A DNA stretch of 64,000 nt, from positions 248,001-312,000 of the forward strand of contig NIVC01000542.1 in the NCBI GenBank assembly GCA_002269645.1. Direction: 5' to 3'. The position numbers and the translations under genes are program-made. The notes under the pieces are model-generated. The model was not told the origin of the DNA, made no database searches, and saw nothing but the letters and a program-made list of their open reading frames with translations. Source of the DNA: Macrostomum lignano (Eukaryota). Shown here one piece after another: positions 32,387 through 64,000 of this stretch; the first letter of the stretch is position 1, and the number at the start of each line of letters is the position of its first letter.

Positions 32387-33037
32387 GCGGCCGGCGAAGC
32401 TGCAGCGGCAGAAGCAGGACATGAGTGAAATTTGCCAGATGGCCTACTGACGAAAGTAGTCTGTCTAGTGATTTACTGCTGCTACTATAGAAATACCCAT
32501 TGATAAGCTGTTCTTCATCTTAAGCTGCCATGAGCTGCATACTAACCACAGCCAACTCTGCTTAACTTGCAGCACTGACGGTGAATGCACTAATCCACTC
32601 GGCTACTGAGGCTGCTTCAACCTTTACCTCTTGGCTGGTAAGCAAGCATAGTAGTAACACTTAGTTAAATACAAGCTGGTGAATCACGGCAAATGAATTG
32701 GAAAAGAAATGCCTGCTTTAAATATCAATAAGTTTAACAAGCGAGGCGAGCGAGCGACAAGCAGTTTATGTTTAGAAAATTTTGCTTTAATTTACAGGCC
32801 AATGTGCAGCTGAAATTTGTTGAAAACTAGAATGGGACGGTACATAATAAAAGCTTTCATACGCACAGAAATATACTTTATAAGAAAGTACAGATATAAT
32901 AAAAGTGCGTAAAATTGCTGCACCGAAGAGCTGAGTCTGACTGCAGTCAGCGGAGTTCAGTTAGAAAATTGACAAACAAGCGAAACACATGAACGAATGC
33001 AGCCCCTGCGTCACACCGGCTTCTGGACCCAATGACG

Positions 33038-37763: not shown

Positions 37764-37999
37764 GGCTGGCGCTGAGGGGAAGGCGGCGGTGCTCAAACTG
37801 CCTTACAGGTGTAAACGTAAACGTAACAAAACTGTAAACGTACTGACTGAATAGAATAGGCCCAGTTTATTCAAGTCATGCAAAAATCTCAAAACCACGG
37901 TAGCCCACTAACCTAATGCTGAGCTGCATGGGGCATGGCAACCGAGGATTAGGGCTGTGTCACTTTAGGATTGAATTAACTTCACAATGGAGCCACAGA

Positions 38000-38860: not shown

Positions 38861-39624
38861 TATTTCGATTAGCAAGACCAAGTATCAATTTAAGCTAAAT
38901 ACCTCAAAAGCGTTCAAAAGTTGTCCCAGAGTATCCAAGACCCTAACCGTGTTTAAATATTTGTCAATAATTAACAAGCAAGAATTTACAGCTTCGAAAA
39001 GTTAAAAAAGACACAGCCAAAACTGAAAAAAAGATTGTATATTTGATGATCTCAAAGTAAAAAGCGAATATAAAATAAACTCAATAAAAAAGTTGACTAG
39101 CGAGGAACTCAAAACAAAGCAAAACAAAAAGAATCTTAAATAAATATTGCGGCCCAAAGCAACAGAGAATTCGGTATTTGGCTTGGGCCACGAGCGAGGA
39201 AATTCTATACGAGGAATGCACTAAACAGTCTGTAAATATGAAACTGTCTAATAAACTAATACTAAATCTCACAATACGCAGACAGAGAGCTAAAATATAA
39301 TATTGAAGGCCAGGTAATAACAACAGAATCATGCTAGATAAGACATTGCTATCGAACACAGCAGTAAACAATGTTTATGATGCTTCACAGTGAATCACAG
39401 ATACTAGAATAACTAAATAGGTCACTCGCAATTAAAATTGTGAAAAAGTAGAGCCTCCACTCTTTTTTCAGTAGTTGTCTGCGTTAATGTAATTTAAATT
39501 TGATGTAGCAGATAAAATTCCTTTCCTTCCTCAAGGCTTGCGGCCTCAAGAGCATATGGGGTTAAGAATGAACAAGCATTTGTTAACTCAATGTACACAA
39601 ATGAACGCAAGACGGACGAAACTC

Positions 39625-42762: not shown

Positions 42763-45700
42763 TCACTTCCGGTTGAAGATCGACCTGCCGGAGGTGGGCG
42801 GCGACCGCCGGGAGCCGCAGCACAGCTGAGACCGGAGCCGCCGCACCAGGGAGCCGTGCTCAACCTCGGCCGCCAGCCGCTCGCGCCGCAGCCACTCCAC
42901 GGAGCCGCTGCGCGGCCAGGCGGCCCGCCTCTGCGGCAGCGGAGATTCGGCGGCGCCAGCCTCGACTTGCAGCAGCCGCGCAGTCCAGGGCAGCGGCAGG
43001 AGGCGGCCGCCGCGCTCCGCAGAGTCCAGCCAGTCGCGACAGTGCGCCAGGTAGGTGCGCGCCTGCCGGCACTCGGCGCAGCCCTCGGAGCCGGCGCCAA
43101 CGGCCTGGATGAGGTCGCGCACCACTTGCAGCGCAGACTGCGAGGCTTCGGGCGATTCGGCAAGCTCGCCGACCTCATCGACATCGACGTCGCTGGCGGT
43201 GTCGGCCTCCCAAAGCTGAGGATCGGCGTCCAGACTCTGCAGAGATGCCTGGGCGGCGTCGCGCTGCCCGGCGGGGTGGGTGGGGGATCAGCGATGCAGG
43301 GCGGCTCTTCGCAATTCTTTATTTGATTAATTTCGAGAACAAATATTCGAACCCATGCGATGGAGGGACTCAGGCGAGCTCTGGTGAGCTGCATGATAGG
43401 CTTGTAAATTAAACAGACTGCAGCTTGATTCATTTTTTCTCAAAGCCCAAATGTGCTTAAACTGCGTTAAACCGTACCAGAATCTCCATAACCAACAAGC
43501 AGAACTACTGAGATAAGATTTCCAAGCTGCAATCAATCATAAGCAGGTTCCCATTTGTTCCAATTGTATAAACTCAATTAGCAGTAAGCCACGGGTTGCA
43601 TAATGCTTTCCCCATAAATTGGCCACTTCAATCAAAATAGTTAAAACATTTAGTTGATGCAGTTAAAGGTTTAAAAAGAATAAAAAATAAGCACGCCATC
43701 CAGCAGTAGCTGATTGGCCAGTGACACTACAGAGCTGCTATAATGCACATTAGTAAGCTTTAGTACGGTTAGTAAAGCACAGGTGAAACAAAAGCCGGGC
43801 TGCACAACACTGAGCCGCTGAAAGCACTGAAACACTACCTTCAGTCCTCGGGCCTCAATTGAGCTTGCTGGCGCCTACAACAGAATTAAGCACGGGTTAG
43901 AGAGTGGGCTGTTAAAAAAACGCCAATGCAAAATGGCCTACACAGATGAGAACAGTGCGAGTCTACAGATTAAAGTTGGCTATTTTTGTTATGCTGCGAA
44001 ACCGGCTGCTGCCAGACTCCATTGGCTTGCCAGTGAGGCTCATTGCAAGATACTGCTGTGTTTGCATGGAACTTGATAATCTAAGCTAGTTTTACAAGCG
44101 CACTAGTGAGTTGCTGAGCAACAATATAATGCACACGATGTTAAACTAGGAATAAAAACAGGTAAACCGAAAACGTGTTACGCACATCAGCAAACTATTT
44201 AAATTTGTATACGAACGTTGAAATTCAATAGTGAAATAAGCGGATAATGTTGGGCTTTCACAAAAAGCAATGTTTAAGCTAAATCAAGTTAAAAACGGCA
44301 CAGATGTCTACTCTCTGCTGTAACGAGTGAGCTCAATGGTTTTCTACATAGAGTTATGAAGGATTAAAACAAAAAACAAGCCACAAAACTAGCGGATTAA
44401 AACGGTTCGACCGACTTGGCGGACCGGGTGCTTCCGGGATGTGCATGCACGCAGCGCAACAGCCGGTTCGCTCCCTAGAGTTCGCTGTTATTGGTTGCAC
44501 ACGCAGAGCTCTCAACGCCACGACTCCGCAATCTCTTAGCACACGGGTTTTGCCATCAATGCTAATTTTTCTCACCAGAGCGGAGGAAGTGGTGGCGGCG
44601 GCCAAGGCAGCCTTGGCTGACTCACTCGACTGGCGCGGGCGCAGCGGCGCGGAGGAGGCGGGCACAGGAAACGGCCGGCTGGGCCGCAGGCGCTTGCCCG
44701 CCTCCGTGGCAACGTAGCCGCAGTCGTCAGAGACGCCGGACGCATCGTGTTTGCATTCGTAAATGTCTCTTCCAGCGCCCCCGCTGCTGCTACCGCGACA
44801 GTCTTGCAGTCGCCTGTAGATATCCTCAAGCGTCCGGCCTGGCGGAAGCTGCTGGGCAGCGGAGGCGCACAATTTGCACACAAAATCCCACATGGCTAGA
44901 AGCATCTGGGTCGCTTGCAGCTTGAGAAAGTCGCATGGAAACATGACAGCAGTTCCGCCATCCGAAAGCAGCTGCTTGACCTCAGAATCGAGCAGAGACA
45001 GTCTCTCTGCTACCTCACCGGCGGCTTCCTCGGGTGGGCAGGCGAAATAGCGGCGCGACTCCGCGACCGCTAACTGAAGAAAACTACCCAACCCATTTCC
45101 AGTGAGATCGAAAACAGATCCGCTAGTATTTACATTGTTTACCTGGTCCGCTACAGTCGCAGCTTCCGCGTCTGCTGCATCAAGTACAGCATCGATGTCA
45201 GTCTCCAGGAAGCTGAGGATGCCCTTCAGCTTCACTTTGACAGGCGGGTCGACGTCAATGTCCGTCTGGCTTTCGTTGTCTCGCATTGCGGGGCGCTGCT
45301 CATCTGACGGCTCAACCTGAATGAAGGGCTTGAAAGCCAACGGCGCAATCTTTGGCGCGATTTCCGACTCGAGACTGGCGCCGTCGCCGAAATGACTCGG
45401 CTCCGGCTCCGAATCTTTGGCGAATTCCAGGACACTGCTGAGCCATTCGGGGGGTCGAGCTGTGGGAGCTTCAGCAAAGTCGCTGCTTACAGGCCGACAC
45501 TGAGTTGACTCTGATTGCTTGAGCTCTACTGCATTCTGTTGACTTGCAATTAGGTCTTCGGAGAAGAATTGCTCTGCACTACGTTCGACTGCATTCGGGT
45601 TGGAGTCGGTAGTCTGGGAGCAAGAATCTTGCGTCACTATAACTTTTTGATCCGTGAGAGTCAAGCTTCTTTCTTTCTCTAACAGACTGCGTTGAAACTC

Positions 45701-48700
45701 GTCCAGCTGGTTGTTCCTAATGTCAAGCTCCAACTTTTGTCCATATAAGTTCCTCTCGCAATCAAGTAGTTCACTTTGCTTCTGTACGATTTCTGCCCAT
45801 CTGGTTTGCAACTCAATCTCAGCGATTGCCTTTCTTTCTTCAAAATTTGCTTGAGCCACAGCCAGTTCGTGTCTTGATGCAATGATGGAATCATTTGCTT
45901 CAGCTAATAATGTTTGGCTGCTTTCAAATTCTGATCCAGATGAACCATAACCAACCTCACCGTGCTGGAATTCAGTGTTAGTACTGGCGTCTACTATCCG
46001 TTCAGATGAACCTGAACCTGCATCAGCCTGGAAAAGCACTGCACTTGAGCTAGAATCGACTTTTCCGTCAGTAGTTCCGGAACCGATTTCGCTATAACTG
46101 ACTGCAGCAACTGTACTGGCATCGACGTTGTCATCCGTTGAGCCTACACTGGCGTCGATTAGAATACACTCCGCACTCGAGCTAGCATCGACTTTTCCAG
46201 CACATGATCCTGAGCCGATCTCACTATGCTCAACTTCAGCTCTAGTGCTGGCATCTACTTTCCTTTCAGATGAACCTGAACCTGCATCAGCCTGGAAAAG
46301 CACCGCACTTGAGCTAGAATCGACTTTTCCGTCAGTAGTTCCAGAACCGATTTCGATATAACTGACTGCAGCAACTGTACTGGCATCGACTTTGTCATCC
46401 GTTGAGCCTACACTGGCGTCGATTAGAATACACTCCGCACTCGAGCTAGCATCGACTTTTCCAGCACATGATCCTGAGCCTATCTCACTATACTCAACTT
46501 CAGCTCTAGTGCTGGCATCTACTTTCCTTTCAGATGAACCTGAACCTGCATCAGCCTGGAAAGGCACTGCACTTGAGCTAGAATCGACTTTTCCGTCAGT
46601 AGTTCCAGAACCGATTTCGCTATAACTGACTGCAGCAACTGTACTGGCATCAACGTTGTCATCCGTTGAGCCTATACTGACGTCGATTAGAATACACTCC
46701 GCACTCGAGCTAGCATCGACTTTTCCAGCACATGATCCTGAGCCGATCTCACTATGCTCAACTTCAGCTCTAGTGCTGGCATCTACTTTCCTTTCAGATG
46801 AACCTGAACCTGCATCAGCCTGGAAAAGCACCGCACTTGAGCTAGAATCGACTTTTCCGTCAGTAGATCCAGGACCAATTTCCCTATAACTGACTGCAGC
46901 AACTGTGCTGGAGTCGGCAGCACGATTCTCAACCTCAGCACTAGTGTCAGCATCCAGATTCCGTTCTGATGCATGCGACAATACATTATCTTGGAGACAC
47001 TCTGTGCCTGTGCTGGCATCAATTTTACCGTCAGACGATCCATAACCGACCTCACCGTGCTGGAATTCAGTGTTAGTACTGGCATCTACTTTCCTTTCAG
47101 ATGAACCTGAACCTGCATCAGCCTGGAAAAGCACTGCACTTGAGCTAGAATCGACTTTTCCGTCAGTAGTTCCAGAACCGATTTCGATATAACTGACTGC
47201 AGCAACTGTACTGGCATCGACTTTGTCATCCGTTGAGCCTACACTGGCGTCGATTAGAATACACTCCGCACTCGAGCTAGCATCGACTTTTCCGTCAATA
47301 GATCCAGGACCGATTTCACTATAACTGACTACAGCAGATGTGCTGGCATGGACGTTACCCTCTGCTGAGACTACAATGGCGTCGTCTTCTTGGATATTCA
47401 CTCGGCACTTTCGGCACACAGATACACCGATTTCGACACTTGAACTCTTATCAATCTTTTCGGCTGCACGATTCTCGACCTCAGCACTAGTGTCAGCATC
47501 TAGATTCCGTTCTGTTGCATGCGACAATACATTATCTTGGAGACACTCTGTGCCTGTGCTGGCATCAATTTTACCGCCAGACGATCCATAACCGACCTCA
47601 CCGTGCTGGAATTCAGTGTTAGTACTGGCGTCTACTATCCGTTCAGATGAACCTGAACCTGCATCAGCCTGGAAAAGCACTGCACTTGAGCTAGAATCGA
47701 CTTTTCCGTCAGTAGTTCCAGAACCGATTTCGCTATAACTGACTGCAGCAACTGTACTGGCATCGACGTTGTCATCCGTTGAGCCTACACTGGCGTCGAT
47801 TAGAATACACTCCGCACTCGAGCTAGCATCGACTTTTCCAGCACATGATCCTGAGCCTATCTCACTATACTCAACTTCAGCTCTAGTGCTGGCATCTACT
47901 TTCCTTTCAGATGAACCTGAACCTGCATCAGCCTGGAAAGGCACTGCACTTGAGCTAGAATCGACTTTTCCGTCAGTAGTTCCAGAACCGATTTCGCTAT
48001 AACTGACTGCAGCAACTGTACTGGCATCAACGTTGTCATCCGTTGAGCCTATACTGACGTCGATTAGAATACACTCCGCACTCGAGCTAGCATCGACTTT
48101 TCCAGCACATGATCCTGAGCCGATCTCACTATGCTCAACTTCAGCTCTAGTGCTGGCATCTACTTTCCTTTCAGATGAACCTGAACCTGCATCAGCCTGG
48201 AAAAGCACCGCACTTGAGCTAGAATCGACTTTTCCGTCAGTAGATCCAGGACCAATTTCCCTATAACTGACTGCAGCAACTGTGCTGGAGTCGGCAGCAC
48301 GATTCTCAACCTCAGCACTAGTGTCAGCATCCAGATTCCGTTCTGATGCATGCGACAATACATTATCTTGGAGACACTCTGTGCCTGTGCTGGCATCAAT
48401 TTTACCGTCAGACGATCCATAACCGACCTCACCGTGCTGGAATTCAGTGTTAGTACTGGCATCTACTTTCCTTTCAGATGAACCTGAACCTGCATCAGCC
48501 TGGAAAAGCACTGCACTTGAGCTAGAATCGACTTTTCCGTCAGTAGTTCCAGAACCGATTTCGCTATAACTGACTGCAGCAACTATACTGGCATCGACGT
48601 TGTCATCCGTTGAGCCTACACTGGCGTCGATTAGAATACACTCCGCACTCGAGCTAGCATCGACTTTTCCGTCAATAGATCCAGGACCGATTTCACTATA

Positions 48701-51700
48701 ACTGACTACAGCAGATGTGCTGGCATGGACGTTACCCTCTGCTGAGACTACAATGGCGTCGTCTTCTTGGATATTCACTCGGCACTTTCGGCACACAGAT
48801 ACACCGATTTCGACACTTGAACTCTTATCAATCTTTTCGGCTGCACGATTCTCGACCTCAGCACTAGTGTCAGCATCTAGATTCCGTTCTGATGCATGCG
48901 ACAATACATTATCTTGGAGACACTCTGTGCCTGTGCTGGCATCAATTTTACCGCCAGACGATCCATAACCGACCTCACCGTGCTGGAATTCAGTGTTAGT
49001 ACTGGCGTCTACTATCCGTTCAGGTGAACCTGAACCTGCATCAGCCTGGAAAAGCACTGCACTTGAGCTAGAATCGACTTTTCCGTCAGTAGTTCCAGAA
49101 CCGATTTCGCTATAACTGACTGCAGCAACTGTACTGGCATCGACGTTGTCATCCGTTGAGCCTACACTGGCGTCGATTAGAATACACTCCGCACTCGAGC
49201 TAGCATCGACTTTTCCAGCACATGATCCTGAGCCTATCTCACTATACTCAACTTCAGCTCTAGTGCTGGCATCTACTTTCCTTTCAGATGAACCTGAACC
49301 TGCATCAGCCTGGAAAAGCACTGCACTTGAGCTAGAATCGACTTTTCCGTCAGTAGTTCCAGAACCGATTTCGCTATAACTGACTGCAGCAACTGTACTG
49401 GCATCGACGTTGTCATCCGTTGAGCCTACACTGGCGTCGATTAGAATACACTCCGCACTCGAGCTAGCATCGACTTTTCCGTCAATAGATCCAGGACCGA
49501 TTTCACTATAACTGACTACAGCAGATGTGCTGGCATGGACGTTACCCTCTGCTGAGACTACAATGGCGTCGTCTTCTTGGATATTCACTCGGCACTTTCG
49601 GCACACAGATACACTGATTTCGACACTTGAACTCTTATCAATCTTTTCGGCTGCACGATTCTCGACCTCAGCACTAGTGTCAGCATCTAGATTCCGTTCT
49701 GATGCATGCGACAATACATTATCTTGGAGACACTCTGTGCCTGTGCTGGCATCAATTTTACCGCCAGACGATCCATAACCGACCTCACCGTGCTGGAATT
49801 CAGTGTTAGTACTGGCGTCTACTATCCGTTCAGATGAACCTGAACCTGCATCAGCCTGGAAAAGCACTGCACTTGAGCTAGAATCGACTTTTCCGTCAGT
49901 AGTTCCAGAACCGATTTCGCTATAACTGACTGCAGCAACTGTACTGGCATCGACATTGTCATCCGTTGAGCCTACACTGGCGTCGATTAGAATACACTCC
50001 GCACTCGAGCTAGCATCGACTTTTCCAGCACATGATCCTGAGCCGATCTCACTATGCTCAACTTCAGCTCTAGTGCTGGCATCTACTTTCCTTTCAGATG
50101 AACCTGAACCTGCATCAGCCTGGAAAAGCACCGCACTTGAGCTAGAATCGACTTTTCCGTCAGTAGATCCAGGACCAATTTCCCTATAACTGACTGCAGC
50201 AACTGTGCTGGAGTCGGCAGCACGATTCTCAACCTCAGCACTAGTGTCAGCATCCAGATTCCGTTCTGATGCATGCGACAATACATTATCTTGGAGACAC
50301 TCTGTGCCTGTGCTGGCATCAATTTTACCGTCAGACGATCCATAACCGACCTCACCGTGCTGGAATTCAGTGTTAGTACTGGCATCTACTTTCCTTTCAG
50401 ATGAACCTGAACCTGCATCAGCCTGGAAAAGCACTGCACTTGAGCTAGAATCGACTTTTCCGTCAGTAGTTCCAGAACCGATTTCGCTATAACTGACTGC
50501 AGCAACTATACTGGCATCGACGTTGTCATCCGTTGAGCCTACACTGGCGTCGATTAGAATACACTCCGCACTCGAGCTAGCATCGACTTTTCCGTCAATA
50601 GATCCAGGACCGATTTCACTATAACTGACTACAGCAGATGTGCTGGCATGGACGTTACCCTCTGCTGAGACTACAATGGCGTCGTCTTCTTGGATATTCA
50701 CTCGGCACTTTCGGCACACAGATACACCGATTTCGACACTTGAACTCTTATCAATCTTTTCGGCTGCACGATTCTCGACCTCAGCACTAGTGTCAGCATC
50801 TAGATTCCGTTCTGATGCATGCGACAATACATTATCTTGGAGACACTCTGTGCCTGTGCTGGCATCAATTTTACCGCCAGACGATCCATAACCGACCTCA
50901 CCGTGCTGGAATTCAGTGTTAGTACTGGCGTCTACTATCCGTTCAGATGAACCTGAACCTGCATCAGCCTGGAAAAGCACTGCACTTGAGCTAGAATCGA
51001 CTTTTCCGTCAGTAGTTCCAGAACCGATTTCGCTATAACTGACTGCAGCAACTGTACTGGCATCGACGTTGTCATCCGTTGAGCCTACACTGGCGTCGAT
51101 TAGAATACACTCCGCACTCGAGCTAGCATCGACTTTTCCAGCACATGATCCTGAGCCTATCTCACTATACTCAACTTCAGCTCTAGTGCTGGCATCTACT
51201 TTCCTTTCAGATGAACCTAAACCTGCATCAGCCTGGAAAAGCACTGCACTTGAGCTAGAATCGACTTTTCCGTCAGTAGTTCCAGAACCGATTTCGCTAT
51301 AACTGATTGCAGCAACTGTACTGGCATCGACATTGTCATCCGTTGAGCCTACACTGGCGTCGATTAGAATACACTCCGCACTCGAGCTAGCATCGACTTT
51401 TCCAGCACATGATCCTGAGCCTATCTCACTATACTCAACTTCAGCTCTAGTGCTGGCATCTACTTTCCTTTCAGATGAACCTGAACCTGCATCAGCCTGG
51501 AAAAGCACTGCACTTGAGCTAGAATCGACTTTTCCGTCAGTAGTTCCAGAACCGATTTCGATATAACTGACTGCAGCAACTGTACTGGCATCGACGTTGT
51601 CATCCGTTGAGCCTACACTGGCGTCGATTAGAATACACTCCGCACTCGAGCTAGCATCGACTTTTCCGTCAATAGATCCAGGACCGATTTCACTATAACT

Positions 51701-54700: not shown

Positions 54701-57700
54701 TTCTTGAAGAGCAGCTTTTTCAATTGACATTTCTTTGATCGTATCATTTGCCGCAAGAATTTGCTGCGCCTGGTGCTCCTTATTTTCCTGCAGGATAGCC
54801 TCTGCTGATTTTACCTCGGCTATTAGTTGGTGCAATGTGGACAATTCTGATTTCATGGAATCTATATGAGCCTTCAATTGGTCCTGCTCCGCCACAGCAT
54901 TCTTTTTTGCAGCTAGAAGGGCATCACTTTCGGCCTTCAATTGGCTATTTAATTGCTCAGTCGAACTAAGTGATTCCTGCAATTTAGAATTATTAATGGC
55001 TATTGATGACGTTTCGTGTCTCAAAATTTCTAACCGCGCTTCTAGAACTTCCTTTTCTTCCATTAACGATCGATTTGTCGCACTAAGAATGCGCTCACGC
55101 TCGGCAACTAAGTCAATTGTCTGCTCAAGTTCGGCCGATCGGTTTACAAGAGCTTCAAGCTTCTTGCGCATTGTCTCTTTCTCTTTTAGCGCATTTTCAT
55201 ACAAGTCTTGAAGTTGGCGAAATTCAAATTTAGAGTTAGGGCTCTCTAAAAACGAATAATCTGGTCCAATGTGTTGAATATCAGATGAAACAGAATAAAA
55301 ATCGTCTTCAGATTCATCGACATCGGAGTGCAAATTCAACGTGTTTGCTGCGACCGAGTTCCAGGCAATTTGCCCGATCTCAACAACTCTTTGATGGGTA
55401 TCTTCTGATGAAGCTGATGTAGCTGGCATGACTGGTGAATCCGTTTGACAGAAGGCATCACAGGACAGGGAAACAACTGCGAGGCAACTTTCAGACTGAG
55501 AAATTAATCGTGTGTTTAGAGCCACCTTGTCTAAACAGCGACTATTCCATCTAGGGCCGATAAAAGAGGATAACAAAAAGTCTAAACCAGATTGCCTCTT
55601 TGAACCACTCCAATTAGCTGTATTAGTTAAATCCTCATGAATAACTGGTTTCTTGAGTGAAGCAGATGCCTTAGTAGACGATTCTAAGGGTTGATTCTCT
55701 GATTCCTGACGTAGCAAATGAAGATCACTCATGCTTAGGGACGGCTTCAACTTATCTTTAGCGAAAATATATGAACTTGTGACAAGAGTATCTGTTAAAT
55801 AAGGTTTTTCAGTTGGGCCACTCGAGGCAACAGCCAATTCAAGTTTTGTGCTCGCGCTTGTCTCAATTCTCTCGTCAGTGAATCCACTGGAAGCATAAGA
55901 AAATTCGATCTTTGTGCTTGTGCTTGCGTCGATACTTTTTTTAGTTGGACCACTCGATGCATCTGCAAATCCGAGTTTTGCGCTGCTGCTGCCATCAACT
56001 CTCTCTTCGCTTAGTCCACTAGATGCATCAGCAATGTTGACTTTTGCGCTTGTGCTTGCGTCAACACCTTCTTGAGTAAAACCACTTGGTGCATCAGCAA
56101 TGTTGACTTTTGCGCTTGTGCTTGCGTCGATACTTTCTTTAGTTGCACTACTCGACGCATCAGCAACTTCGAGTTTTGCGCTGGTGCTGGCATCAACTCT
56201 CTTTTCGCCTAGTCCGCTCGATGCATCAGCATACTCGAGTTTTGCGTCTGTGCTGGCATCAGCTCTCTCGTCGCTTAGTCCGCTCGATGCATCAGCAAAT
56301 TCGAGCTTTACGTCTGTGCAGGCATCAGCTCTCTCTTTGCTTAGTCCGCTCGATGCATCTGCAAATTCGAGCTTTGCGTCTGTGCTGGCATCAGTCCTCT
56401 CTTTGCTTAGTCCGCTCGATGCATCAGCAAATTCGAGCTTTGCGCTAGTGCTGGCATGAACTCTTTCTTCGCTTAGTCCGCTCGATGCATCAACAAATTC
56501 GAGCTTTAAGCTTGTGCTGACATCAGCTCTCTCTTCGCTTAGTCCGCTCGATGCATCAGCAATGTTGACTTTTGTGCTTGTGCTTGCGTCGATACTTTCT
56601 TTAGTTGGACTACTCGACGCATCAGCAACTTCGAGTTTTGCGCTGGTGCTGGCATCAACTTTCTCGTCGCTTAGTCCGCTCGATGCATCGGCAAATTCGA
56701 GCTTTGCGTCTGTGCTGGCATCAGCTCTCTCTTCGCTTAGTCCACTGGATGCATCAGCAAATTCGAGCTTTGCGTCTGTGCTGGCATCAGTTCTCTCTTT
56801 GCTTAGTCCGCTCGATGCATCTGCAAATTCGAGCTTTGCGCTGGTGCTGGCATCAACTTTCTCGTCGCTTAGTCCGCTCGATGCATCGGCAAATTCGAGC
56901 TTTGCGTCTGTGCTGGCATCAGTTCTCTCTTTGCTTAGTCCGCTCGATGCATCAGCAAATTCGAGCTTTGCGTCTGTGCTGGCATCAGTTCTCTCTTTGC
57001 TTAGTCCGCTCGATGCATCTGCAAATTCGAGCTTTGCGCTGGTGCTGGCATCAACTCTCTCTTCGCCTAGTCCGCTAGATGCATCAGCATACTCGAGTTT
57101 TGCGTCTGTGCTTGCATCAGTTCTCTCTTTGCTTAGTCCGCTAGATGCATCAGCAACTTCGAGTTTTGCGCTGGTGCTGGCATCAACTTTCTCGTCGCTT
57201 AGTACGCTCGATGCATTTGCAAATTCGAGCTTTACTTCTGTGCTGGCATCAGCTCTCTCTTCGCTTAGTCCGCTCGATGCATCAGCAACTTCGAGTTTTG
57301 CGCTGGTGCTGGCATGAACTCTCTCTTCGCTTAGTCCGCTCGATGCATCAGCAAATTCGAGCTTTACGTCTGTGCAGGCATCAGCTCTCTCTTTGCTTAG
57401 TCCGCTCGATGCATCTGCAAATTCGAGCTTTGCGTCTGTGCTGGCATCAGCTCTCTCTTTGTTTAGTCCACTGGATGCATCAGCAATTTTGACTTTTGCG
57501 CTTGTGCTTGCGTCGATACTTTCTTTAGTTGCACTACTCGACGCATCAACAACTTCGAGTTTTGCGCTGGTGCTGGCATCAACTCTCTCGTCGCTTAGTA
57601 CGCTCGATGCATTTGCAAATTCGAGCTTTACTTCTGTGCTGGCATCAGCTCTCTCTTCGCTTAGTCCGCTCGATGCATCAGCAACTTCGAGTTTTGCGCT

Positions 57701-60700
57701 GGTGCTGGCATGAACTCTGTCTTCGCTTAGTCCGCTCGATGCATCAGCTCTCTCTTCGCTTAGTCCGCTCGATGCATCTGCAAATTCGAGCTTTGCGTCT
57801 GTGCAGGCATCAGCTCTCTCTTTGCTTAGTCCGCTCGATGCATCTGCAAATTCGAGCTTTACGTCTGTGCAGGCATCAGCTCTCTCTTTGCTTAGTCCGC
57901 TCGATGCATCAGCAAATTCGAGCTTTGCGTCTGTGCTGGCATCAGTTCTCTCTTTGCTTAGTCCGCTCGATGCATCTGCAAATTCGAGCTTTGCGCTGGT
58001 GCTGGCATCAACTCTCTCTTCGCCTAGTCCGCTAGATGCATCAGCATACTCGAGTTTTGCGTCTGTGCTGGCATCAGTTCTCTCTTTGCTTAGTCCGCTA
58101 GATGCATCAGCAACTTCGAGTTTTGCGCTGGTGCTGGCATCAACTTTCTCGTCGCTTAGTACGCTCGATGCATTTGCAAATTCGAGCTTTACTTCTGTGC
58201 TGGCATCAGCTCTCTCTTCGCTTAGTCCGCTCGATGCATCAGCAACTTCGAGTTTTGCGCTGGTGCTGGCATGAACTCTCTCTTCGCTTAGTCCGCTCGA
58301 TGCATCAGCAAATTCGAGCTTTACGTCTGTGCAGGCATCAGCTCTCTCTTTGCTTAGTCCGCTCGATGCATCTGCAAATTCGAGCTTTGCGTCTGTGCTG
58401 GCATCAGCTCTCTCTTTGTTTAGTCCACTGGATGCATCAGCAATTTTGACTTTTGCGCTTGTGCTTGCGTCGATACTTTCTTTAGTTGCACTACTCGACG
58501 CATCAACAACTTCGAGTTTTGCGCTGGTGCTGGCATCAACTCTCTCGTCGCTTAGTACGCTCGATGCATTTGCAAATTCGAGCTTTACTTCTGTGCTGGC
58601 ATCAGCTCTCTCTTCGCTTAGTCCGCTCGATGCATCAGCAACTTCGAGTTTTGCGCTGGTGCTGGCATGAACTCTGTCTTCGCTTAGTCCGCTCGATGCA
58701 TCAGCTCTCTCTTCGCTTAGTCCGCTCGATGCATCTGCAAATTCGAGCTTTGCGTCTGTGCAGGCATCAGCTCTCTCTTTGCTTAGTCCGCTCGATGCAT
58801 CTGCAAATTCGAGCTTTACGTCTGTGCAGGCATCAGCTCTCTCTTTGCTTAGTCCGCTCGATGCATCTGCAAATTTGAGCTTTGCGTCTGTGCTGGCATC
58901 AGCTCTCTCTTTGCTTAGTCCACTGGATGCATCAGCAATGTTGACTTTTGAGCTTGTGCTTGCGTCGATACTTTCTTTAGTTGCACTACTCGAAGCATCA
59001 GCAACTTCGAGTTTTGCGCTGGTGCTGGCATTAACTCTGTCTTCGCCTAGTCCGCTAGATGCATCAGCAATGTTGCCTCTTGCGTCTGTGCTGGCATCCG
59101 CTCTCTCGTCGCTTAGTCCGCTCGATGCATCAGCAAATTCGAGCTTTGCGCTTGTGCTGACATCAGCTCTCTCTTCGCTTAGTCCGCTCGATGCATCAGC
59201 AAATTCGAGCTTTGCGCTGGTGCTGACATCAGCTCTCTCTTCGCTTCGTCCGCTCGATGCATCAACAAATTCGAGTTTTGCGCTTGTGCTGGCCTCAGCT
59301 TTCTCTTCGCTTAGTCCGCTCGATGCATCAGCAAATTCGAGTTTTGCGCTGGTGCTGGCATGGCTTGTGCCTGCATTTTGAGCTAAATTTTCCTCTTTTT
59401 GTCCAATTATTTTTCGATTCGTATGATCTATACTTAGAACAGGCGGCATGCTTGCTGAAATGAGAATATTGGGTAAGCTCTCACATCTTCTGATTTGAAA
59501 TGTTTTGGACGAGAGCCTGATAAATTCGTTGGTTTCTGTTTGAAGTCCAAATAGCGCACTTCTTTTTCGCTGCGTATATTCGTCTATTTGATGTGGAACA
59601 CCGAAATCGCTTGTTTCGTGAAGTGCATAGCCACTACTATTTATAAGGCCAACAGTTTCCGATGTGCATGTATACTCTAAATCATGCGAGAACTCGTTTT
59701 CTTCGAAAAATTCCTCACATTGAGCGAGGGCTGTAGTACTAACATGGTGATGCTGAGAACTCGTATCTACTAAGAAACTCTGTAACTTTTCTCGAAGTAT
59801 CTCCATATTTTGTTCCTGACTTTGATTTAATTCTACCAGTTGTACTAATTTTGAGTCCTTAATGCGCAAAAGCTCCTCAAGGTATGTATTCTGGCGACGG
59901 ATTTCGGATTCTGATTGCAACGCTCGGTCGTGGCTAGAAATAAGGTGATCAAGCTCATCTAGTATATTGAATTCGGATTTTTGCTGCCCTCTTTTAAATG
60001 GTGCTCTCAAAAATGTGCGATCTTTGAGTTGCCTCGAAATAGTTTCAAGAATACATTTTTTCTCAAGAACGTCCAACGATAAGCGATCAAGTCTAGCCAA
60101 TAAGTCTCCGTTTTCAGATGGCAGCAGTCCAATATGCTGATTGAAGTCCTTTGATACTTTTTCGCCCACTTTATCAATTTCGGTCTGCAAACAGGTCAAT
60201 CGATCAACGAGCTGTTTGATGTGATTACTAGCCTGAGAAAGATTTACGTCCTTAGTTTCTGACTCAGCTCGTAAGGCTTGCCGCTCATCAGAGAGTCGAC
60301 ATACTTCCAACTCAAATTCATCAATAAGGGATCGTGTAAAATCAAGCGCTTCTTTGAGACCTCTGTTCTCATCAGATAGACTGATATTCTGGTTAGACAG
60401 AGTGAAAACTTGCATATTTAGGCCACGAAGGACAACTTTCATCTCTTCGTTGTATCGTTCCACGAAGGTTTGGTGGCTTAGAACTTCTGTCTGTGTTTCA
60501 ACAGACACAGAATTGCGAGCGGTCACATTAAAAGCTCTTAAGGTGGTGTCCAACTCAAATGTTGCGTCACCTTGAACATAATCATGCATGACTTCCATTT
60601 GAAGTGAGCTTGGTGCAGAGACAGCATGATTCTTTGCCTCGTCGGATTGGAAATATGTTGGTACTTCAAGAACTGATTCACTAGCTGCTCCGAATCTCGG

Positions 60701-63700
60701 TTGTGTCATTAAGGCTGCATCAAATTGTCTGAAAACCGTCTCGGCACAGGCAGGATCTGATGTTACAAAGCCGCTTTCTGAGAGGCTCTTAACTGTTGGA
60801 AAATCCACTTTTCTCTCCGCAATGGAAGCGCTTTCTCTTGCCGGGTCATTATTATCAGAAACAGATGCCTGGTCGTGAAAAAAACCGCGAGAATTTTCAG
60901 TCCGAGAAGGAACACAAGTACTGGATGGATCAGTGCCTGAAGTCATATTTTCTGCATACTGAATATCCGGTGCAGTAAAGTATTCTGTGTTTGTGTGAGC
61001 ATCAACGGTCATGATTGCACAATCAACTGAAGAATCGGATAGCAGAGGCTTGCGAAATTCTAAACTAGCATCTAATGCAGCACCGCTTCTTTCTTGCAAA
61101 CCACTAGCGTTTGAACTTGGAAATATTGGCTGAGCACCTGAAGAATTAAAAGCACTTGTAAACAATTCTTTGCAACTGCGAGTTTTTCTCATTGCACTTT
61201 GAGTACTAGCATCTGACACAATGAATGTATGAGCTGCGCCTAAGGCACCTTGATCAGCTGCTTGAGCGGAATCAGAACTATTTTTTTGCTGCATCTTTCG
61301 CTCCTTCATATGTAGTACAACAGGGACCGTAGACTCATTGTCGGCTTCAATTTTAAACTTACTGTTTTGAGCGCCAAAAAATTCGCGAACACTATCTGAG
61401 CTATATGCAAAAGCACATTGAACGCTAGCATCAAGCATTTCTGCAGCAACTGTGAATCCAGGGAAACCAGAGTCCAATTCTATATCGGTACTCGCATCAA
61501 TCAGAATAGCTTTGTCTGTAACCGAATACGCATCGCAAAAAAGCGGATGTACTACAGTATGATCAACTAGATCAAAAGAATGTTTCGGTGCTGATGAAGC
61601 ATCAGTGTTTTTTTGGCTGTCCATTAACAATTTAGCTTTGGAAATTCCCAGCTCTGAGTCCATGCTTGCATCGCTGCTAGAAACAATTGTGCATGCATCA
61701 CGACTTTGAAAAGCATCGGTTGAAACACATACACTAGTAACTCTGATTGAACAATCCACTTCTGCATTGACTAGCGCTTGATTAAAACTCTCGGTGCTTG
61801 CATCAACCAACACACGCGTGTCGGCTTCCATTTTCGCGGTCGTACTTGCATCGCTAGTTGCTTTTATTTCTCTCCATACAAAGCCACTATCAAGGAGTGC
61901 AGTCGAGGTAGTAGTAGCTTCATTGCCTTTAATAGCATCGCTAACTTTGGAGGTACCTTGATAATGTGTAGCTATATCAGCAGGTCGTCGTAAATCAGAG
62001 CTCTCAAAGACTTGTGCTAGGCTTTCTTGATGAGCTGCCATCTCGGTGCCATCTGTACTTGCTTCAAATCTTTCCAATTGTGGCGTGCATACTTTTATAT
62101 CTTTTCCTTTAACTCCTTCACCGCCCGCGCACTGAGTGGCTTCAGCGAAATTATCAAAAGGTGTATCCGTGCCTACGTCCATGGAGCCACTAAAACAAGA
62201 ATCAGTAATAGTTCCTGTTGAAGTACGATTTGGCGTGTTGGTGCTTGTCTCTGTCATGCGAATTAATTCTGTGGATAAATCTGCATTTCTTACTGTCAAT
62301 GAACAGTCAATAGCTGCATCTTTCACAATCTTTGGCTCACAGTTTGTACCAGCATCGGATATCTCAATGGTCTCTGTGGATGCATATGAACTTGACAATA
62401 CGACCGTACATTCAATGGCTGCATCGTGAACAACAATTTCATCGCAATTGGTAGCTTCTTCAATACGCTCAGCACCGCAGCTAGCGTTTTTAACTTGAAT
62501 AGTACATTCAGAAGCAGCTTCTCTTCTAGAAGGGCATTCACAGTCTGTACTTGCGTCAGACATCAGAAGGACATCCGTCGAAATGCTCACTTCTTTTGCA
62601 TTTTTTACAGACTGGACAGCTTTTTCGCAGCAAGAGAACTCTATATCTCTTCCAACAATTGCGTCAGATACTAGCGGATGCTCTGTGGAAACGGCAACAC
62701 TGATGAGCAGATTAGAACATGTTACAGATGCTTCGACACTTGAAACTTCGTTGAACACAGTAGATGCATCAGAAGTATCAGAAACGTCTGTTGACGTGTA
62801 GCGGCTGCTAAACTGCCTGATGTTGTCCACAGAGACATCCTGTTTAAGGACTTGTTGTTGGCATTCTATAGATGCATCACAAAGTTCTAAAGAGGTTAGA
62901 GTAGCTACATCAACGCTGTTAAAACATGGGACACATTCAACTGCGGCGTTACATGTCCGCTCGCGTCCTGTAGCAATGTCAGTAGTAAGCAGTGGACCAG
63001 TCTCGTCCGTCAAAGTACCAACTGCAGCTGTGGTAGTTTTCATGTATTCTGTACTCTTTTCGAGCTTATGGGGCCGATCTGATGAAACATTAAAAACGGC
63101 TGACGGTACTGCAGACTCGGCAACAACTGTATGCATACACATCTCTTCAGAATCCAAATTTGTTACATTTTCTTGAATTTTGACTTCACCTTGAGTAAGA
63201 TTTTTGACTCGAATGCCGGAAACACTGCTGTCCTTATCAAGGTAGTCGCGAGAGCTTGCCATGTATGTGAACATGGGGGCTTCCCACTGGGTGCCCTGGT
63301 CACACATGCCACGTTTTTGCCCACGACTATTTATTTCGGCTATGAATTCTTCTGCAGCGGAATCTTCAATACAATCGGCACTCTTGCTAGGTCGAAGAGG
63401 CTGTGTTGGACCAGCGGCAGAAATAGAAACCCTTCGCTGGCTTTCTAGGAATACATCGAGCGACTTTGACAGTGACCGAGAAAGTGAGGCTACTTTCTGC
63501 TGGAACTCAGCGACCTCAGACGCAGCAGATTTGTTCAAACTTGACTGGCTAGAAGCGGCAGATGCAAATGCTGCTGACTGCTCAATGCAAGCGAGGGATA
63601 TCACGCCCGGCAGCTGATCTCCGATCCCCGGGTAGGAACGGCTCGGATGCAGCTTCCCACCGGGCCGCCAATCTATGTTGCGGCTGTCCCCGCGCAGGCA

Positions 63701-64000
63701 GTTTCGACTGAGACTGAGAATCTCTGAGTCGAGCTCCAAGTATCGCTTCAGATGGTCCAGCTGCGAATCATGCAGTTCAAAGGCTTGGATGTCTGAAACA
63801 AGCGACTGAACTTTCGCCTCGGTATCGGAGAGCCCGGAGGAAAGGCTACAGCGTTGGCGCAGGCATGCACAGTATTCAAGCCGATCTGACTTGACCATAG
63901 CGAGAAAGCTGGACAGGCTGGCATCGGAATCCTCCTGCCGTCTGATGGCGCTGCTGTCGCCGCCGCCGTTGAGGTCGCAGACAACCCGCACGAGGCGCTC
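42763..64000 (-). CDS. Giant (>6,600 aa) coiled-coil / 11-aa-repeat protein, 5' end outside the window
   Basis: The frame is open from 64000 to a strong donor ctg|gtgaga at 44576 (19,425 nt, 6,475 codons, no stop). It is phase-0 compatible with the acceptor gccgcccag|gca at 43248, which reads to TGA at 42763. The protein has several heptad-rich segments and two large repeat blocks. Confidence 0.85.
45950..53400 (-). repeat. Coding repeat block 2 of the giant exon (11-aa register; 264-, 810-, 1377-bp and longer higher-order units)
   Basis: Units such as VDASTRAEVEH-SEIGSGSCAGK-VDASSSAECIL-IDASVGSTDDN-VDASTVAAVSY. Identical side ORFs recur at 46128/46392/46656 (264 bp apart) and 46783/48160 (1,377 bp apart). 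Confidence 0.95.
55880..59370 (-). repeat. Coding repeat block 1 of the giant exon (33/66-bp units; 957-bp higher-order duplication)
   Basis: Units ADASTDAKLEF-ADASSGLSKER. Identical side ORFs at 57145/58102, 57372/58329 and 57529/58486 are 957 bp apart, i.e. 29 x 33 bp. Confidence 0.95.

What the first reader, a model, noticed from the sequence alone, without database searches (positions are those of the whole stretch)
44576..64000. Giant protein with hundreds of 11-aa-periodic DAS(T/S) units between coiled coils: candidate LC8 (dynein light chain) ladder scaffold
Seen: over 6,470 aa in one frame. Two repeat blocks with different sequences share the same 11-residue register built on [A/V/I]-D-A-S-[T/S/V]-x (about 105 and about 225 registers by length/33; not all carry the motif). 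The non-repetitive N-terminal region keeps similar spacing (DASIEC, DASTDC, EKAVQS, EVSISTD, DAGTNC, ETSTNT). Canonical TQT-like motifs are scattered: DQGTQW ~63295, VETQTE ~60495, FCQTD ~55445, SSQTD ~54035, CSQTTD ~45615, ESQTD ~45265. These Ser/Thr/Asp-rich disordered stretches alternate with long coiled coils (~60470-60150, ~55230-54150, ~45930-45650). Known: LC8/DYNLL binds ~10-aa beta-strand motifs with D at -4/-3 and a TQT-type anchor, usually in disordered regions next to coiled coils; multivalent clients such as ASCIZ, Nup159 and KANK carry only a handful to about a dozen sites, and stacked LC8 dimers stiffen Nup159 into a rod. Inference: this may be an LC8-polymerising molecular ruler or filament with roughly ten times more sites than described clients. 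Caveat: most repeat units lack the anchor Gln, so binding may be weak or absent.
Basis: partly seen in the sequence, partly recalled or inferred. Interest (0 to 1): 0.85.

Follow-up and report, generated by a model that had tools for sequence, protein, structure and literature searches.

The report
Giant flatworm repeat and coiled-coil protein
This is a real giant gene (over 6,500 codons) of the flatworm Macrostomum lignano that alternates coiled coils with two arrays of a 22-residue acidic Ser/Thr-rich repeat; it carries one textbook and about twenty borderline dynein-light-chain (LC8) docking motifs, but nothing shows that its roughly 200 repeat units form an LC8 ladder.

Summary
The sequence observation largely holds. 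One frame on the minus strand is open for 6,549 codons (64000 to 44354). It contains three heptad-periodic coiled-coil segments, two tandem-repeat arrays and all six TQT-like motifs at the stated coordinates.

The repeat unit is 22 residues, not 11. There are 54 units in block 1, which has an internal half-repeat. There are about 100 units in block 2, which has no 11-residue sub-period. That gives about 165-200 DAS-type heads, not about 330 registers.

The gene belongs to Macrostomum lignano. A 96% identical second copy has a transcript-derived annotation in GenBank. No homologue was found anywhere else, and there is no Pfam domain.

A scoring matrix built from 79 validated LC8 binders finds:
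- one excellent site, VSVETQTE, just before coiled coil 1;
- ten VDASTNTE units, each followed 22 residues later by IDASTGTE;
- a few SQT sites.

About 90% of repeat heads score far below every known binder, and their putative anchor position is among the least conserved positions of the unit. However, recent KANK1 work shows that LC8 ladders can form on non-canonical weak motifs, so the ladder idea is untested rather than refuted.

Most likely this is a lineage-specific, coiled-coil-dimerised structural scaffold that takes LC8 at a few sites.

The parts
44354..64000 (-). Open reading frame of 6,549 codons. It runs off the window at its 5' end. The likely exon end is 44576, with a GT donor at 44575-44574; the stop is at 44354-44356.
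   Evidence: By homology to L001/P0002 the exon starts about 75 nt beyond the window edge, and at least about 150 further codons lie upstream.
60512..63991 (-). N-terminal Ser/Thr/Asp/Ala-rich non-repetitive region (aa 1-1160). It has a short degenerate repeat of about 11.7 aa at aa 460-600 (window 62614-62192).
   Evidence: No Pfam domain. It is 96% identical to M. lignano BOX15_Mlig029816g2.
60485..60508 (-). Canonical LC8-type motif VSVETQTE (aa 1162-1169), 12 residues upstream of coiled coil 1.
   Evidence: Matrix score 18.1 against a binder median of 14.6. Retained as MSVETQTE in the second gene copy.
59765..60451 (-). Coiled-coil segment 1 (aa 1181-1409).
   Evidence: Crude heptad scan. 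28% of non-repeat residues are coiled-coil-like, against 4% in shuffles.
55805..59362 (-). Repeat block 1: 54 units of 22 aa, consensus ADASTSAKLEF-ADASSGLSKER. The 66-nt period has 132/198-nt super-periods.
   Evidence: pN/pS is 0.57 among 36 distinct unit DNAs. AF2 model with pLDDT 68.8 and two strands per unit.
53837..55360 (-). Coiled-coil segment 2 (aa 2878-3385), interrupted.
   Evidence: The top autocorrelation lags in the mid region are 14, 42, 21, 28 and 7; heptad scan.
45932..53371 (-). Repeat block 2: about 100 units of 22 aa, consensus VDASTSAEVSY-SEIGSGSTDGK. The architecture is (A B C D)n A B N followed by an irregular 35-aa or 38+34-aa insert. Higher-order copies are 97-100% identical in DNA.
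   Evidence: It aligns in register with the block-1 unit: profile score 31.6 at shift 0, against a mean of -7.6 (sd 11.1) over all shifts.
45971..52576 (-). Ten 'N' units VDASTNTE. The 8-mers start at window 52576, 52009, 50935, 50389, 49822, 49012, 48466, 47635, 47089 and 45994. All but the last, which ends the array, are followed 22 aa later by IDASTGTE.
   Evidence: Matrix score 14.6, falling to 8.7 when the three WWC TNT training motifs are removed. IDASTGTE scores 8.6. Conserved in the second gene copy.
45623..45916 (-). Coiled-coil segment 3 (aa ~6026-6123).
   Evidence: The heptad scan core is aa 6084-6123. Lags 7 and 21 are among the top lags in the C-terminal part.
45260..45283 (-). 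LC8-type motif RDNESQTD (aa 6237-6244).
   Evidence: Matrix score 14.3.
44732..45214 (-). C-terminal region that looks non-repetitive and more hydrophobic (aa 6260-6420). No homologue was found.
   Evidence: Uversky position. No hit in the word-indexed search. The exhaustive HMMER search gave only one spurious hit.

Best explanation
The finding is most likely a lineage-restricted, cytoplasmic structural scaffold protein of Macrostomum lignano.

- Three coiled-coil segments would pair two chains in parallel register.
- Between them lie two long arms made of one homologous 22-residue unit. The unit is an xDAST-x-A-x-hydrophobic-x-aromatic stretch followed by a Ser/Gly/charged loop. It was amplified recently in higher-order blocks.
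- The arms would act as extended, acidic, Ser/Thr-rich spacers that may be prone to beta-strand formation.
- LC8 probably docks as a dimer clamp at the canonical VSVETQTE site in front of coiled coil 1. It may also dock at the ten TNT/TGT unit pairs and the SQT sites. That would be a client with up to about 20-25 sites in small, scattered clusters, not a continuous ladder.

Shown here: the ORF, the organism, the 22-aa unit and its common origin in both blocks, the heptad periodicity, the motif scores, and weak purifying selection.

Inferred: cytoplasmic location, dimerisation, the spacer role, and any LC8 binding.
For: - ORF and architecture.
- Organism: M. lignano. A 96% identical second copy has an annotation that derives from RNA-seq-guided transcripts and covers the N-terminus, coiled coil 1 and about 17 block-1 units.
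- Heptad periodicity.
- No Pfam, extracellular or Cys-rich domains, and no signal peptide in the roughly 150 upstream residues recovered.
- pN/pS is about 0.5-0.57 among units, so the protein sequence is weakly constrained.
- Within-type copies are nearly identical in DNA, which indicates recent amplification.
- Block 1 differs in length between the two copies (3.56 kb against about 3.0 kb), which is typical of a length-tolerant spacer.
- LC8 matrix results.
Against: - The 5' end of the gene is not in hand, so a signal peptide cannot be excluded.
- No expression site, partner or structure is known.
- Disorder is not shown. Both blocks sit on the Uversky boundary, and AF2 draws strands.
- The LC8 sites rest on a home-made matrix. 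On it, anchor-containing non-binders score up to 16.7, and VSVSTQTA, a close relative of the best site, is a documented non-binder.
Confidence: 0.4

Rival explanations
1. Both repeat arrays are LC8-polymerising ladders. Most xDAS[ST] heads, spaced 11 or 22 residues apart, bind LC8 dimers weakly but cooperatively between two chains held in register by the coiled coils. This would give rods hundreds of nanometres long with about 100-200 LC8 dimers.
For: - KANK1-L2 binds 15 LC8 dimers through non-canonical anchors (TST, IGC, VNT, VMA) that LC8Pred misses and that do not bind as isolated peptides. Short uniform linkers drive the cooperativity.
- The heads carry D at -4, S at -2 and T/S at -1. Block-2 flank-only scores are 2.6-6.8, against a binder median of 5.0.
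- Coiled coils flank both arrays.
- An 11-residue extended strand is about 3.7 nm (inference). That matches the roughly 3.5 nm per LC8 of the KANK1 rod (53 nm for 15 dimers).
- A canonical TQT site is present.
Against: - Anchor-only scores of the dominant heads are -6.8 to -11, against a binder minimum of +4.6.
- Putative position 0 (S/D/E in block 1; S/V/R/N/G in block 2) is among the least conserved unit positions, whereas A, S, G and K positions outside the anchor are nearly invariant.
- Asp at position 0 in 38% of block-1 units is a charged residue in the anchor, where reference 2019 reports deviations to a charged group as highly unfavourable.
- Block 2 has no real 11-aa register.
- In sequence shuffled to the same composition, about 2.5% of 8-mers already have binder-like flanks.
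- A 3-residue linker gave heterogeneous, off-register complexes in ASCIZ.
Confidence: 0.07
2. The 22-residue units fold on their own into a beta-solenoid or cross-beta rod, with one coil or hairpin per unit. The protein would be a rigid fibrous material, and the resemblance to LC8 motifs would simply reflect amphipathic beta-strand sequence.
For: - AF2 on a single sequence gives 12 block-1 units a periodic two-strands-per-unit model with pLDDT 68.8 and pTM 0.64.
- The weak Foldseek neighbours of that model are mostly parallel beta-helices: pectate lyases, tailspikes, autotransporters.
- 22 residues per coil is typical of right-handed beta-helices (general knowledge).
- The strongest hydropathy harmonic in both blocks has period 2.2.
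- Block 2 also gets strands for its regular units.
Against: [quoted passage not shown]
- The block-2 model has pLDDT 40.8.
- No Foldseek hit has E below 0.4.
- The period-2.2 harmonic is not significant against permuted units (p = 0.18 and 0.056).
- Only 17-21% of residues are large hydrophobics, and net charge is -0.10 per residue.
Confidence: 0.2
3. The arrays are purely disordered, multiply phosphorylated acidic spacers (an entropic bristle or spring) with no LC8 role at all. The TQT, TNT and SQT matches would be by-products of a Ser/Thr/Asp-rich composition.
For: - Composition: S+T 26% and D+E 17-21% in the arrays.
- Anchor-containing non-binders are common and score up to 16.7 on the matrix.
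- VDAHTNTE is VDAHTTTE in the second copy, so at least one hit drifts freely.
- Several non-repeat hits (VDAHTNTE, SDAGTNCE, TETSTNTP) are degenerate copies of the protein's own repeat head rather than independent motifs.
Against: - Matrix hits in non-repeat sequence are about 11-fold over shuffles: 8 against 0.70, with 0 of 500 shuffles reaching the observed count.
- VSVETQTE has both a perfect anchor and good flanks, and it lies directly before a coiled coil.
Confidence: 0.22
4. It is a secreted or granule-stored material protein (for example from a gland, rhabdite or copulatory organ), comparable to other giant repetitive flatworm secretory proteins.
For: - M. lignano makes giant repetitive secreted proteins: Mlig-ap1 has 5,407 aa and Mlig-ap2 has 14,794 aa.
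- The 5' end, and therefore any signal peptide, is unknown.
- Many S-x-E triplets exist that a secretory-pathway kinase could use (inference from the sequence).
Against: - There are long heptad coiled coils and no vWD, EGF, TSP1, lectin or Cys-rich modules.
- The protein is acidic rather than Lys/Arg-rich.
- The upstream exons recovered from the second copy encode further coiled coil, not a signal peptide.
Confidence: 0.08
5. Block 1 is a multivalent VAP (MSP-domain) binding array. 27 units read E-[F/Y]-x-D-A-S-S, resembling the FFAT core E-F-F-D-A-x-E.
For: - The pattern E[FY]xDA[x][EDST] occurs 27 times, all in block 1.
- F2, D4 and A5 are the key FFAT contacts.
Against: - There is no acidic tract. 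The upstream residues are S/C-T-D/S-A-K-L, including a Lys.
- Position 22 of the unit is F in 57%, V in 21% and I in 13% of units. It therefore behaves as a generic hydrophobic position, not the obligatory aromatic.
- Position 3 of the core is Ala.
Confidence: 0.03

Closest known systems
KANK1 linker L2 - LC8 rod (Walker et al., bioRxiv 10.1101/2025.07.16.665182)
   Same: It has a coiled coil next to a long Ser/Thr-rich stretch. It has one canonical TQT plus many weak, non-canonical strand motifs on short regular spacing. TST/TNT anchors are conserved. The ladder idea is physically compatible with an 11-residue pitch.
   Different: KANK1 has about 15 sites in about 250-300 aa of non-repetitive sequence, and binding was shown experimentally. 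Here there are 165-200 heads in exact tandem repeats, nothing has been measured, and the anchor position is the variable one.
ASCIZ/ATMIN and Nup159 DID multivalent LC8/Dyn2 clients
   Same: They have multiple LC8 motifs in one chain, and LC8 acts as a dimer clamp or rigidifier. VSVETQTE resembles ATMIN's SSVETQTS and VSRETQTS.
   Different: Those clients carry 5-11 true TQT motifs with 3-41-residue linkers. This protein has a single TQT.
KIBRA/WWC1-3 LC8 motif VDKETNTE/D
   Same: The block-2 'N' unit VDASTNTE shares V-5, D-4, T-1, N0, T+1 and E+2.
   Different: Positions -3 and -2 are A and S instead of K and E. The match drops from 14.6 to 8.7 when the WWC motifs are left out of training.
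Parallel beta-helix / beta-solenoid repeat proteins (pectate lyase-like, tailspikes, autotransporter passengers)
   Same: The repeat is 22 residues. The AF2 model has stacked strands, and the weak Foldseek neighbours are of this class.
   Different: There is no significant structural match. The sequence is highly charged and Ser-rich. This model type is a known AF2 artefact for repeats.
Mlig-ap1 / Mlig-ap2, giant repetitive adhesive proteins of the same species
   Same: Same organism. They are giant, repetitive and lack homologues outside flatworms.
   Different: Those proteins are Lys/Arg-rich or built of 221/255-aa repeats, with vWD, EGF, TSP1 and lectin domains. This one is acidic, has 22-aa repeats and coiled coils, and has no such domains.

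Membership tests
LC8 (DYNLL) client, single canonical site | An 8-residue motif with a TQT-type anchor and permissive flanks | tested here: met
   VSVETQTE scores 18.1 and RDNESQTD scores 14.3, against a binder leave-one-out median of 14.6 and a 10th percentile of 7.5. Similar non-binders exist, for example VSVSTQTA.
LC8 (DYNLL) client, single canonical site | The motif lies in a disordered segment, typically next to a dimerisation domain | tested here: inconclusive
   The site is 12 residues N-terminal to coiled coil 1. Disorder of the flank was not measured or reliably predicted.
LC8 (DYNLL) client, single canonical site | Direct binding to LC8 | not testable with these tools
   No co-folding or binding assay is available.
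Multivalent LC8 ladder client (ASCIZ, Nup159, KANK1-L2) | Many motifs recognisable as LC8 sites | tested here: not met
   About 90% of heads score -8 to 0, and their anchor-only scores lie below every validated binder. Ten TNT units (14.6) and ten TGT units (8.6) do pass or come close. Caveat: KANK1 sites also fail such matrices.
Multivalent LC8 ladder client (ASCIZ, Nup159, KANK1-L2) | Short, regular linkers between successive sites | tested here: inconclusive
   Heads are 11 aa (block 1) or 22 aa (block 2) apart. Matrix-positive sites are 179-365 aa apart, except for the TNT-TGT pairs at 22 aa. The reference range for homogeneous complexes is 6-9-residue linkers.
Multivalent LC8 ladder client (ASCIZ, Nup159, KANK1-L2) | Conservation concentrated on anchor positions -1, 0 and +1 | tested here: not met
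   Information content at putative position 0 is 2.84 bits in block 1 and 2.6 bits in block 2, among the lower values of each unit. A3, S5 and G17 are invariant.
Multivalent LC8 ladder client (ASCIZ, Nup159, KANK1-L2) | Two client chains held in parallel register | tested here: met
   Heptad-periodic segments flank both arrays. Actual dimerisation is inferred.
Beta-solenoid repeat protein | A confident repetitive beta-coil model that matches known solenoids | tested here: inconclusive
   Block 1 has pLDDT 68.8 and block 2 has pLDDT 40.8. The best Foldseek E-value is 0.48. AF2 has a known artefact on repeats.
Beta-solenoid repeat protein | Alternating inward hydrophobic ladder (hydropathy period of about 2) | tested here: inconclusive
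   The strongest harmonic has period 2.2 in both blocks, but p = 0.18 and 0.056 against permuted units.
FFAT-motif VAP client | Core E-[F/Y]-x-D-A-x-[acidic or S/T] preceded by an acidic tract | tested here: not met
   The core is present 27 times, but the upstream residues are S/C-T-D/S-A-K-L with no acidic tract. The aromatic position varies to V or I.
Mlig-ap1/ap2 flatworm adhesive proteins | Lys/Arg-rich regions or 221/255-aa repeats with vWD, EGF, TSP1 or lectin domains | tested here: not met
   No Pfam domain on any segment. The composition is acidic.

The most novel reading that the evidence does not exclude
Both 22-residue arrays, held in register by the flanking coiled coils, recruit LC8 dimers cooperatively at most xDAS[ST] heads, as KANK1-L2 does with its weak non-canonical motifs. 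This would build LC8-stiffened rods with 100-200 LC8 dimers, roughly ten times the largest described client. Such a structure would be a genetically encoded, repeat-number-tunable molecular ruler or filament.
Probability: 0.07. Interest if true: 0.85.

Novelty: new member of a known kind. Interest (0 to 1): 0.4.

Why it matters
As it stands, this is a lineage-specific giant repeat and coiled-coil gene in a regenerating flatworm model that is tractable by RNAi and transgenesis. It is annotated only as fragmented 'hypothetical proteins', so an intact 19.6-kb exon is useful for annotation and for studying how coding higher-order repeats amplify.

Its wider value depends on the LC8 question. The KANK1 result has just shown that weak non-canonical motifs on short regular linkers can be zipped into rods by LC8. 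A natural protein with about 200 evenly spaced strand motifs between coiled coils would be an extreme and easily testable case of that principle. A negative result would help to define what LC8 does not accept.

Tried and rejected
- **Pfam.** Six segments of the ORF, the upstream exons of the second copy and two downstream candidate exons gave nothing above threshold.
- **Word-indexed homology searches.** The C-terminal 531 aa gave no hits. The N-terminus plus coiled coil 1 and the mid region each gave one M. lignano protein only.
- **Exhaustive HMMER search.** The C-terminal 406 aa against 1.84 billion representatives gave one spurious low-complexity hit.
- **PDB sequence search.** The mid coiled coil gave no informative match.
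- **AF2 and Foldseek.** The two repeat models were low-confidence or artefact-prone, with no significant fold match.
- **Period-2 hydropathy test.** Not significant.
- **Upstream exons.** A search of L001 for a start codon or signal peptide found an acceptor-like site at L001 10001 but no convincing exon further up.
- **Literature.** A search for the locus tag and for a described Macrostomum protein of this type found nothing.
- **Identity with Mlig-ap1/ap2.** Rejected.
- **FFAT/VAP reading of block 1.** Considered and judged weak.
- **First reading of the ORF list.** I first took it to imply an upstream stop at the window edge. The translation shows that the frame is open to base 64000.


Full report
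**1. The observation**

The minus strand carries one frame that is open from the window edge (base 64000) to a stop at 44354-44356, a total of 6,549 codons. My amino-acid numbering starts at 63991.

A consensus splice donor, CTG|GTGAGA, lies with its last exon base at 44576. No other frame is open over this stretch. The ORFs of 150-270 codons on the plus strand inside the repeats are by-products of repetition.

Composition is S 16.7%, A 11.9%, D 8.6% and E 8.5%.

A crude heptad scan finds coiled-coil-like segments at:
- aa 1181-1409 (window 60451-59765);
- aa 2878-3385 (window 55360-53837);
- aa 6084-6123 (window 45742-45623).

By this scan, 28% of non-repeat residues are coiled-coil-like, against 4% in shuffles. 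The best BLOSUM autocorrelation lags of the mid region are 14, 42, 21, 28 and 7. The coiled coils are therefore real features.

**2. The repeat unit is 22 residues, not 11**

Tandem Repeats Finder gives 66-nt periods with 132/198/264-nt super-periods in both arrays.

*Block 1* spans aa 1544-2729 and consists of 54 units with consensus ADASTSAKLEF-ADASSGLSKER. Identity is 0.70 at lag 22 and 0.36 at lag 11, so the unit has a genuine internal half-repeat.

*Block 2* spans aa 3541-6020 and consists of 82 regular 22-aa units plus 38-, 34- and 35-aa variants, about 100 units in all.
- The architecture is (A B C D)n A B N followed by an irregular insert.
- Lag-22 identity is 0.31, lag-44 is 0.38 and lag-88 is 0.42.
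- Lag-11 identity is 0.11, against a background of 0.07-0.09.
- The lag-11 BLOSUM signal is only a faint echo (z = 5.0, against 36.8 at lag 22).

A profile-profile comparison over all 22 cyclic shifts shows that the two blocks share one unit in the same register. The score is 31.6 at shift 0. The next best is 7.6 at shift 11, and the mean is -7.6 with sd 11.1.

DAS[STV] occurs 81 times in block 1, 76 times in block 2, 8 times in the N-terminal region and nowhere else. The true number of heads is about 165-200.

The N-terminal 1,100 residues are aperiodic except for aa ~460-600, which has a degenerate period of about 11.7 residues.

**3. Coding status and evolution**

Nei-Gojobori pN/pS among distinct unit DNAs is 0.57 in block 1 and 0.52 across all block-2 units. 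This indicates weak to moderate purifying selection on the protein.

Within block-2 unit types only 2-9 distinct DNA versions exist for 9-26 copies. Windows of 300 nt recur at 97-100% identity. The higher-order repeats were therefore amplified very recently.

**4. Where the gene comes from**

A search with aa 1-1545 returned a single protein: 'hypothetical protein BOX15_Mlig029816g2, partial [Macrostomum lignano]', 96% identical. The mid region returned BOX15_Mlig001161g3.

Their contigs are L001 (NIVC01003894.1) and L002 (NIVC01000652.1), both from assembly GCA_002269645.1. They carry a second copy that is 96% identical through the N-terminus and coiled coil 1, and about 90% identical through the mid region. 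Block 1 is shorter there (about 3.0 kb, against 3.56 kb here). The frame is broken repeatedly inside the repeats.

That assembly is known to contain 180 Mb of duplicated blocks at least 95% identical. Its gene models derive from RNA-seq-guided transcript assemblies. This gives indirect evidence that the locus is transcribed through the N-terminus, coiled coil 1 and about 17 units of block 1.

The second copy also shows that the big exon starts about 75 nt beyond the window edge. At least about 150 further residues, which are coiled-coil-like and show no signal peptide, lie in small upstream exons. The true 5' end was not found.

Outside M. lignano nothing was found:
- no Pfam domain;
- no hit for the C-terminal 531 aa in the word-indexed search;
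- only a spurious hit in an exhaustive HMMER scan of 1.84 billion representatives.

The protein is not Mlig-ap1 or Mlig-ap2, the known giant adhesive proteins of this species.

**5. Testing the LC8 idea with published motifs**

I took the 79 validated binders and 32 anchor-containing non-binders of Jespersen et al. 2019 (PMC6607443, Table S4) and built a log-odds matrix from them. Binder leave-one-out scores have a median of 14.6 and a 10th percentile of 7.5. Non-binders have a median of 7.8 and a maximum of 16.7.

Hits in the ORF:

| Motif | Position | Score |
|---|---|---|
| VSVETQTE | aa 1162 | 18.1 |
| VDASTNTE | ten block-2 units | 14.6 (8.7 without the three paralogous WWC 'VDKETNTE/D' training motifs) |
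| RDNESQTD | aa 6237 | 14.3 |
| VDAHTNTE | aa 996 | 12.8 |
| TETSTNTP | aa 580 | 12.6 |
| ANASSQTD | aa 3314 | 12.4 |
| QDSCSQTT | aa 6121 | 11.4 |
| IDASTGTE | one unit after each of nine TNT units | 8.6 |

In the non-repeat parts there are 8 hits of at least 10, against 0.70 expected from composition-preserving shuffles, and 0 of 500 shuffles reach the observed count. Some of these hits are degenerate copies of the protein's own head motif rather than independent motifs.

VSVETQTE sits 12 residues before coiled coil 1 and survives as MSVETQTE in the second copy. The TNT units are also conserved there, and IDASTGTE becomes IDASTSTE. In contrast, VDAHTNTE becomes VDAHTTTE.

The dominant heads score between -8.4 and 0.0. 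These are ADASTDAK, VDASTSAK, ADASSGLS, VDASTVAA, VDSSSSAV, VDASTRAE and VDASSSAE. Their anchor-only scores are -6.8 to -11, against +4.6 for the worst validated binder.

The putative position 0 is among the least conserved positions of the unit (2.84 and 2.6 bits). A3, S4/S5, G17 and K19 are nearly invariant. That is the opposite of the LC8 motif, where Gln at position 0 is the most conserved residue.

Binder-like flanks are not rare at this composition. About 2.5% of 8-mers in shuffled sequence reach the binder median.

**6. Why the ladder is still not refuted**

A 2026 preprint on KANK1 (10.1101/2025.07.16.665182) reports the following:
- A 15-LC8 rod forms on a linker that has only one canonical motif.
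- Its other sites use TST, IGC, VNT and VMA anchors. They are missed by LC8Pred and do not bind detectably as isolated peptides.
- They bind cooperatively because the linkers are short and uniform.
- The conserved KANK1 anchor is 'TST or TNT'.

A matrix trained on strong binders therefore cannot exclude weak cooperative sites.

The geometry is compatible. The KANK1 rod is about 53 nm for 15 dimers, or about 3.5 nm per LC8. An extended 11-residue strand is about 3.7 nm (my inference).

On the other hand, a 3-residue linker gave off-register, heterogeneous complexes in ASCIZ, and 6-9-residue linkers were optimal.

Co-folding with LC8 could not be run here.

**7. Do the repeats fold?**

AF2 without an alignment gave block 2 (aa 5453-5823) a pLDDT of 40.8, with strands in the regular units.

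It gave block 1 (aa 2270-2533) a pLDDT of 68.8 and a pTM of 0.64, with two strands per unit. The Foldseek neighbours of that model are mostly parallel beta-helices, but none has E below 0.4.

AF2 is documented to give confident, unrealistic beta-solenoids for near-perfect repeats (PMC11795689).

The strongest hydropathy harmonic in both blocks has period 2.2, which is beta-like. It is not significant against permuted units (p = 0.18 and 0.056).

Both blocks sit on the charge-hydropathy boundary. Fold versus disorder is therefore open. The resemblance of the heads to LC8 flanks may simply reflect an amphipathic strand pattern.

**8. Interpretation**

The best-supported reading (confidence 0.4) is a lineage-specific structural scaffold. 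Three coiled coils would pair two chains. Two length-variable, acidic Ser/Thr-rich arms built from one 22-residue unit lie between them. LC8 is a plausible clamp at the TQT site and possibly at the ten TNT/T[G/S]T pairs and the SQT sites.

The rivals are:
- an autonomously folding beta-rod (0.20);
- a purely disordered phospho-acidic spacer with no LC8 role (0.22);
- a secreted material protein (0.08);
- the full LC8 ladder (0.07);
- a VAP/FFAT array (0.03; 27 E[FY]xDASS cores but no acidic tract).

**9. Novelty and score**

The gene is an orphan with a new repeat unit. Giant repetitive coiled-coil scaffolds and LC8 clients are both known kinds, so I class it as a new member of a known kind.

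Interest is moderate (0.4). The LC8-ladder reading would be remarkable and is cheaply testable, but the present evidence makes it unlikely.

Noticed in passing
window 7409-10416, 11093-11851, 33757-34284, 35456-36313, 38000-38861 and others: Introns and intergenic DNA are packed with minisatellites. Examples are a 23-nt unit repeated 130 times, a 24-nt unit repeated 36 times and a 20-nt unit repeated 43 times. This is consistent with the tandem-repeat-rich M. lignano genome (15% simple and tandem repeats according to PMC5730564).
   Followed up: partly
window 34339-37796 (-), 31808-32422 (-), 17712-21655 (-), 1420-1962 (-): Neighbouring genes on the same strand are a WD40 protein resembling RBBP5, a CCZ1-type longin-domain protein, a multi-LOTUS/OST-HTH (MARF1-like) gene and a C2H2 zinc-finger protein. 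No tRNA or Rfam RNA was found in the window.
   Followed up: partly
L001 10001-24258 and L002 3092-15275 (GCA_002269645.1 contigs NIVC01003894.1 and NIVC01000652.1): The second copy of the gene is 90-96% identical, but its frame is broken several times inside the repeats. It is annotated as separate partial 'hypothetical proteins'. Either long-read indel errors or a decaying duplicate could explain this.
   Followed up: partly
L001 866-1105 (-): A homeobox exon (…[55 protein letters not shown]…) lies about 9 kb upstream of the second copy of the giant gene.
   Followed up: no
window 55805-59362 (block 1): 27 units read E-[F/Y]-x-D-A-S-S, an FFAT-like core (compare E-F-F-D-A-x-E). They lack the acidic tract, and the aromatic position also varies to V or I.
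   Followed up: yes
window block 2; aa 3684, 4055, 4413, 4784, 5054, 5513 (for example window 51829-51728): Six higher-order repeats contain an irregular 34-aa insert, IDKSSSVEIGVSVCRKCRVNIQEDDAIVVSAEGN. It has a C-x-x-C pair and is preceded by a 38-aa helix-like insert. Its role is unknown.
   Followed up: no
window 43839-43874 and 42766-43287 (-): Possible downstream exons lie after the 44576 donor. One is a 36-nt open segment between an AG acceptor and a GT donor. The other is a GC-rich open stretch encoding coiled-coil-like sequence (…RERLAAEVEHGSLVRRLRSQL…). It has no Pfam match, and it is unknown whether it belongs to this gene.
   Followed up: partly
window 4122-5246 (-): A Gln-rich ORF carries four tandem PEQRPLQH repeats and ends in a C2H2-like segment. 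It probably belongs to the neighbouring zinc-finger gene.
   Followed up: no
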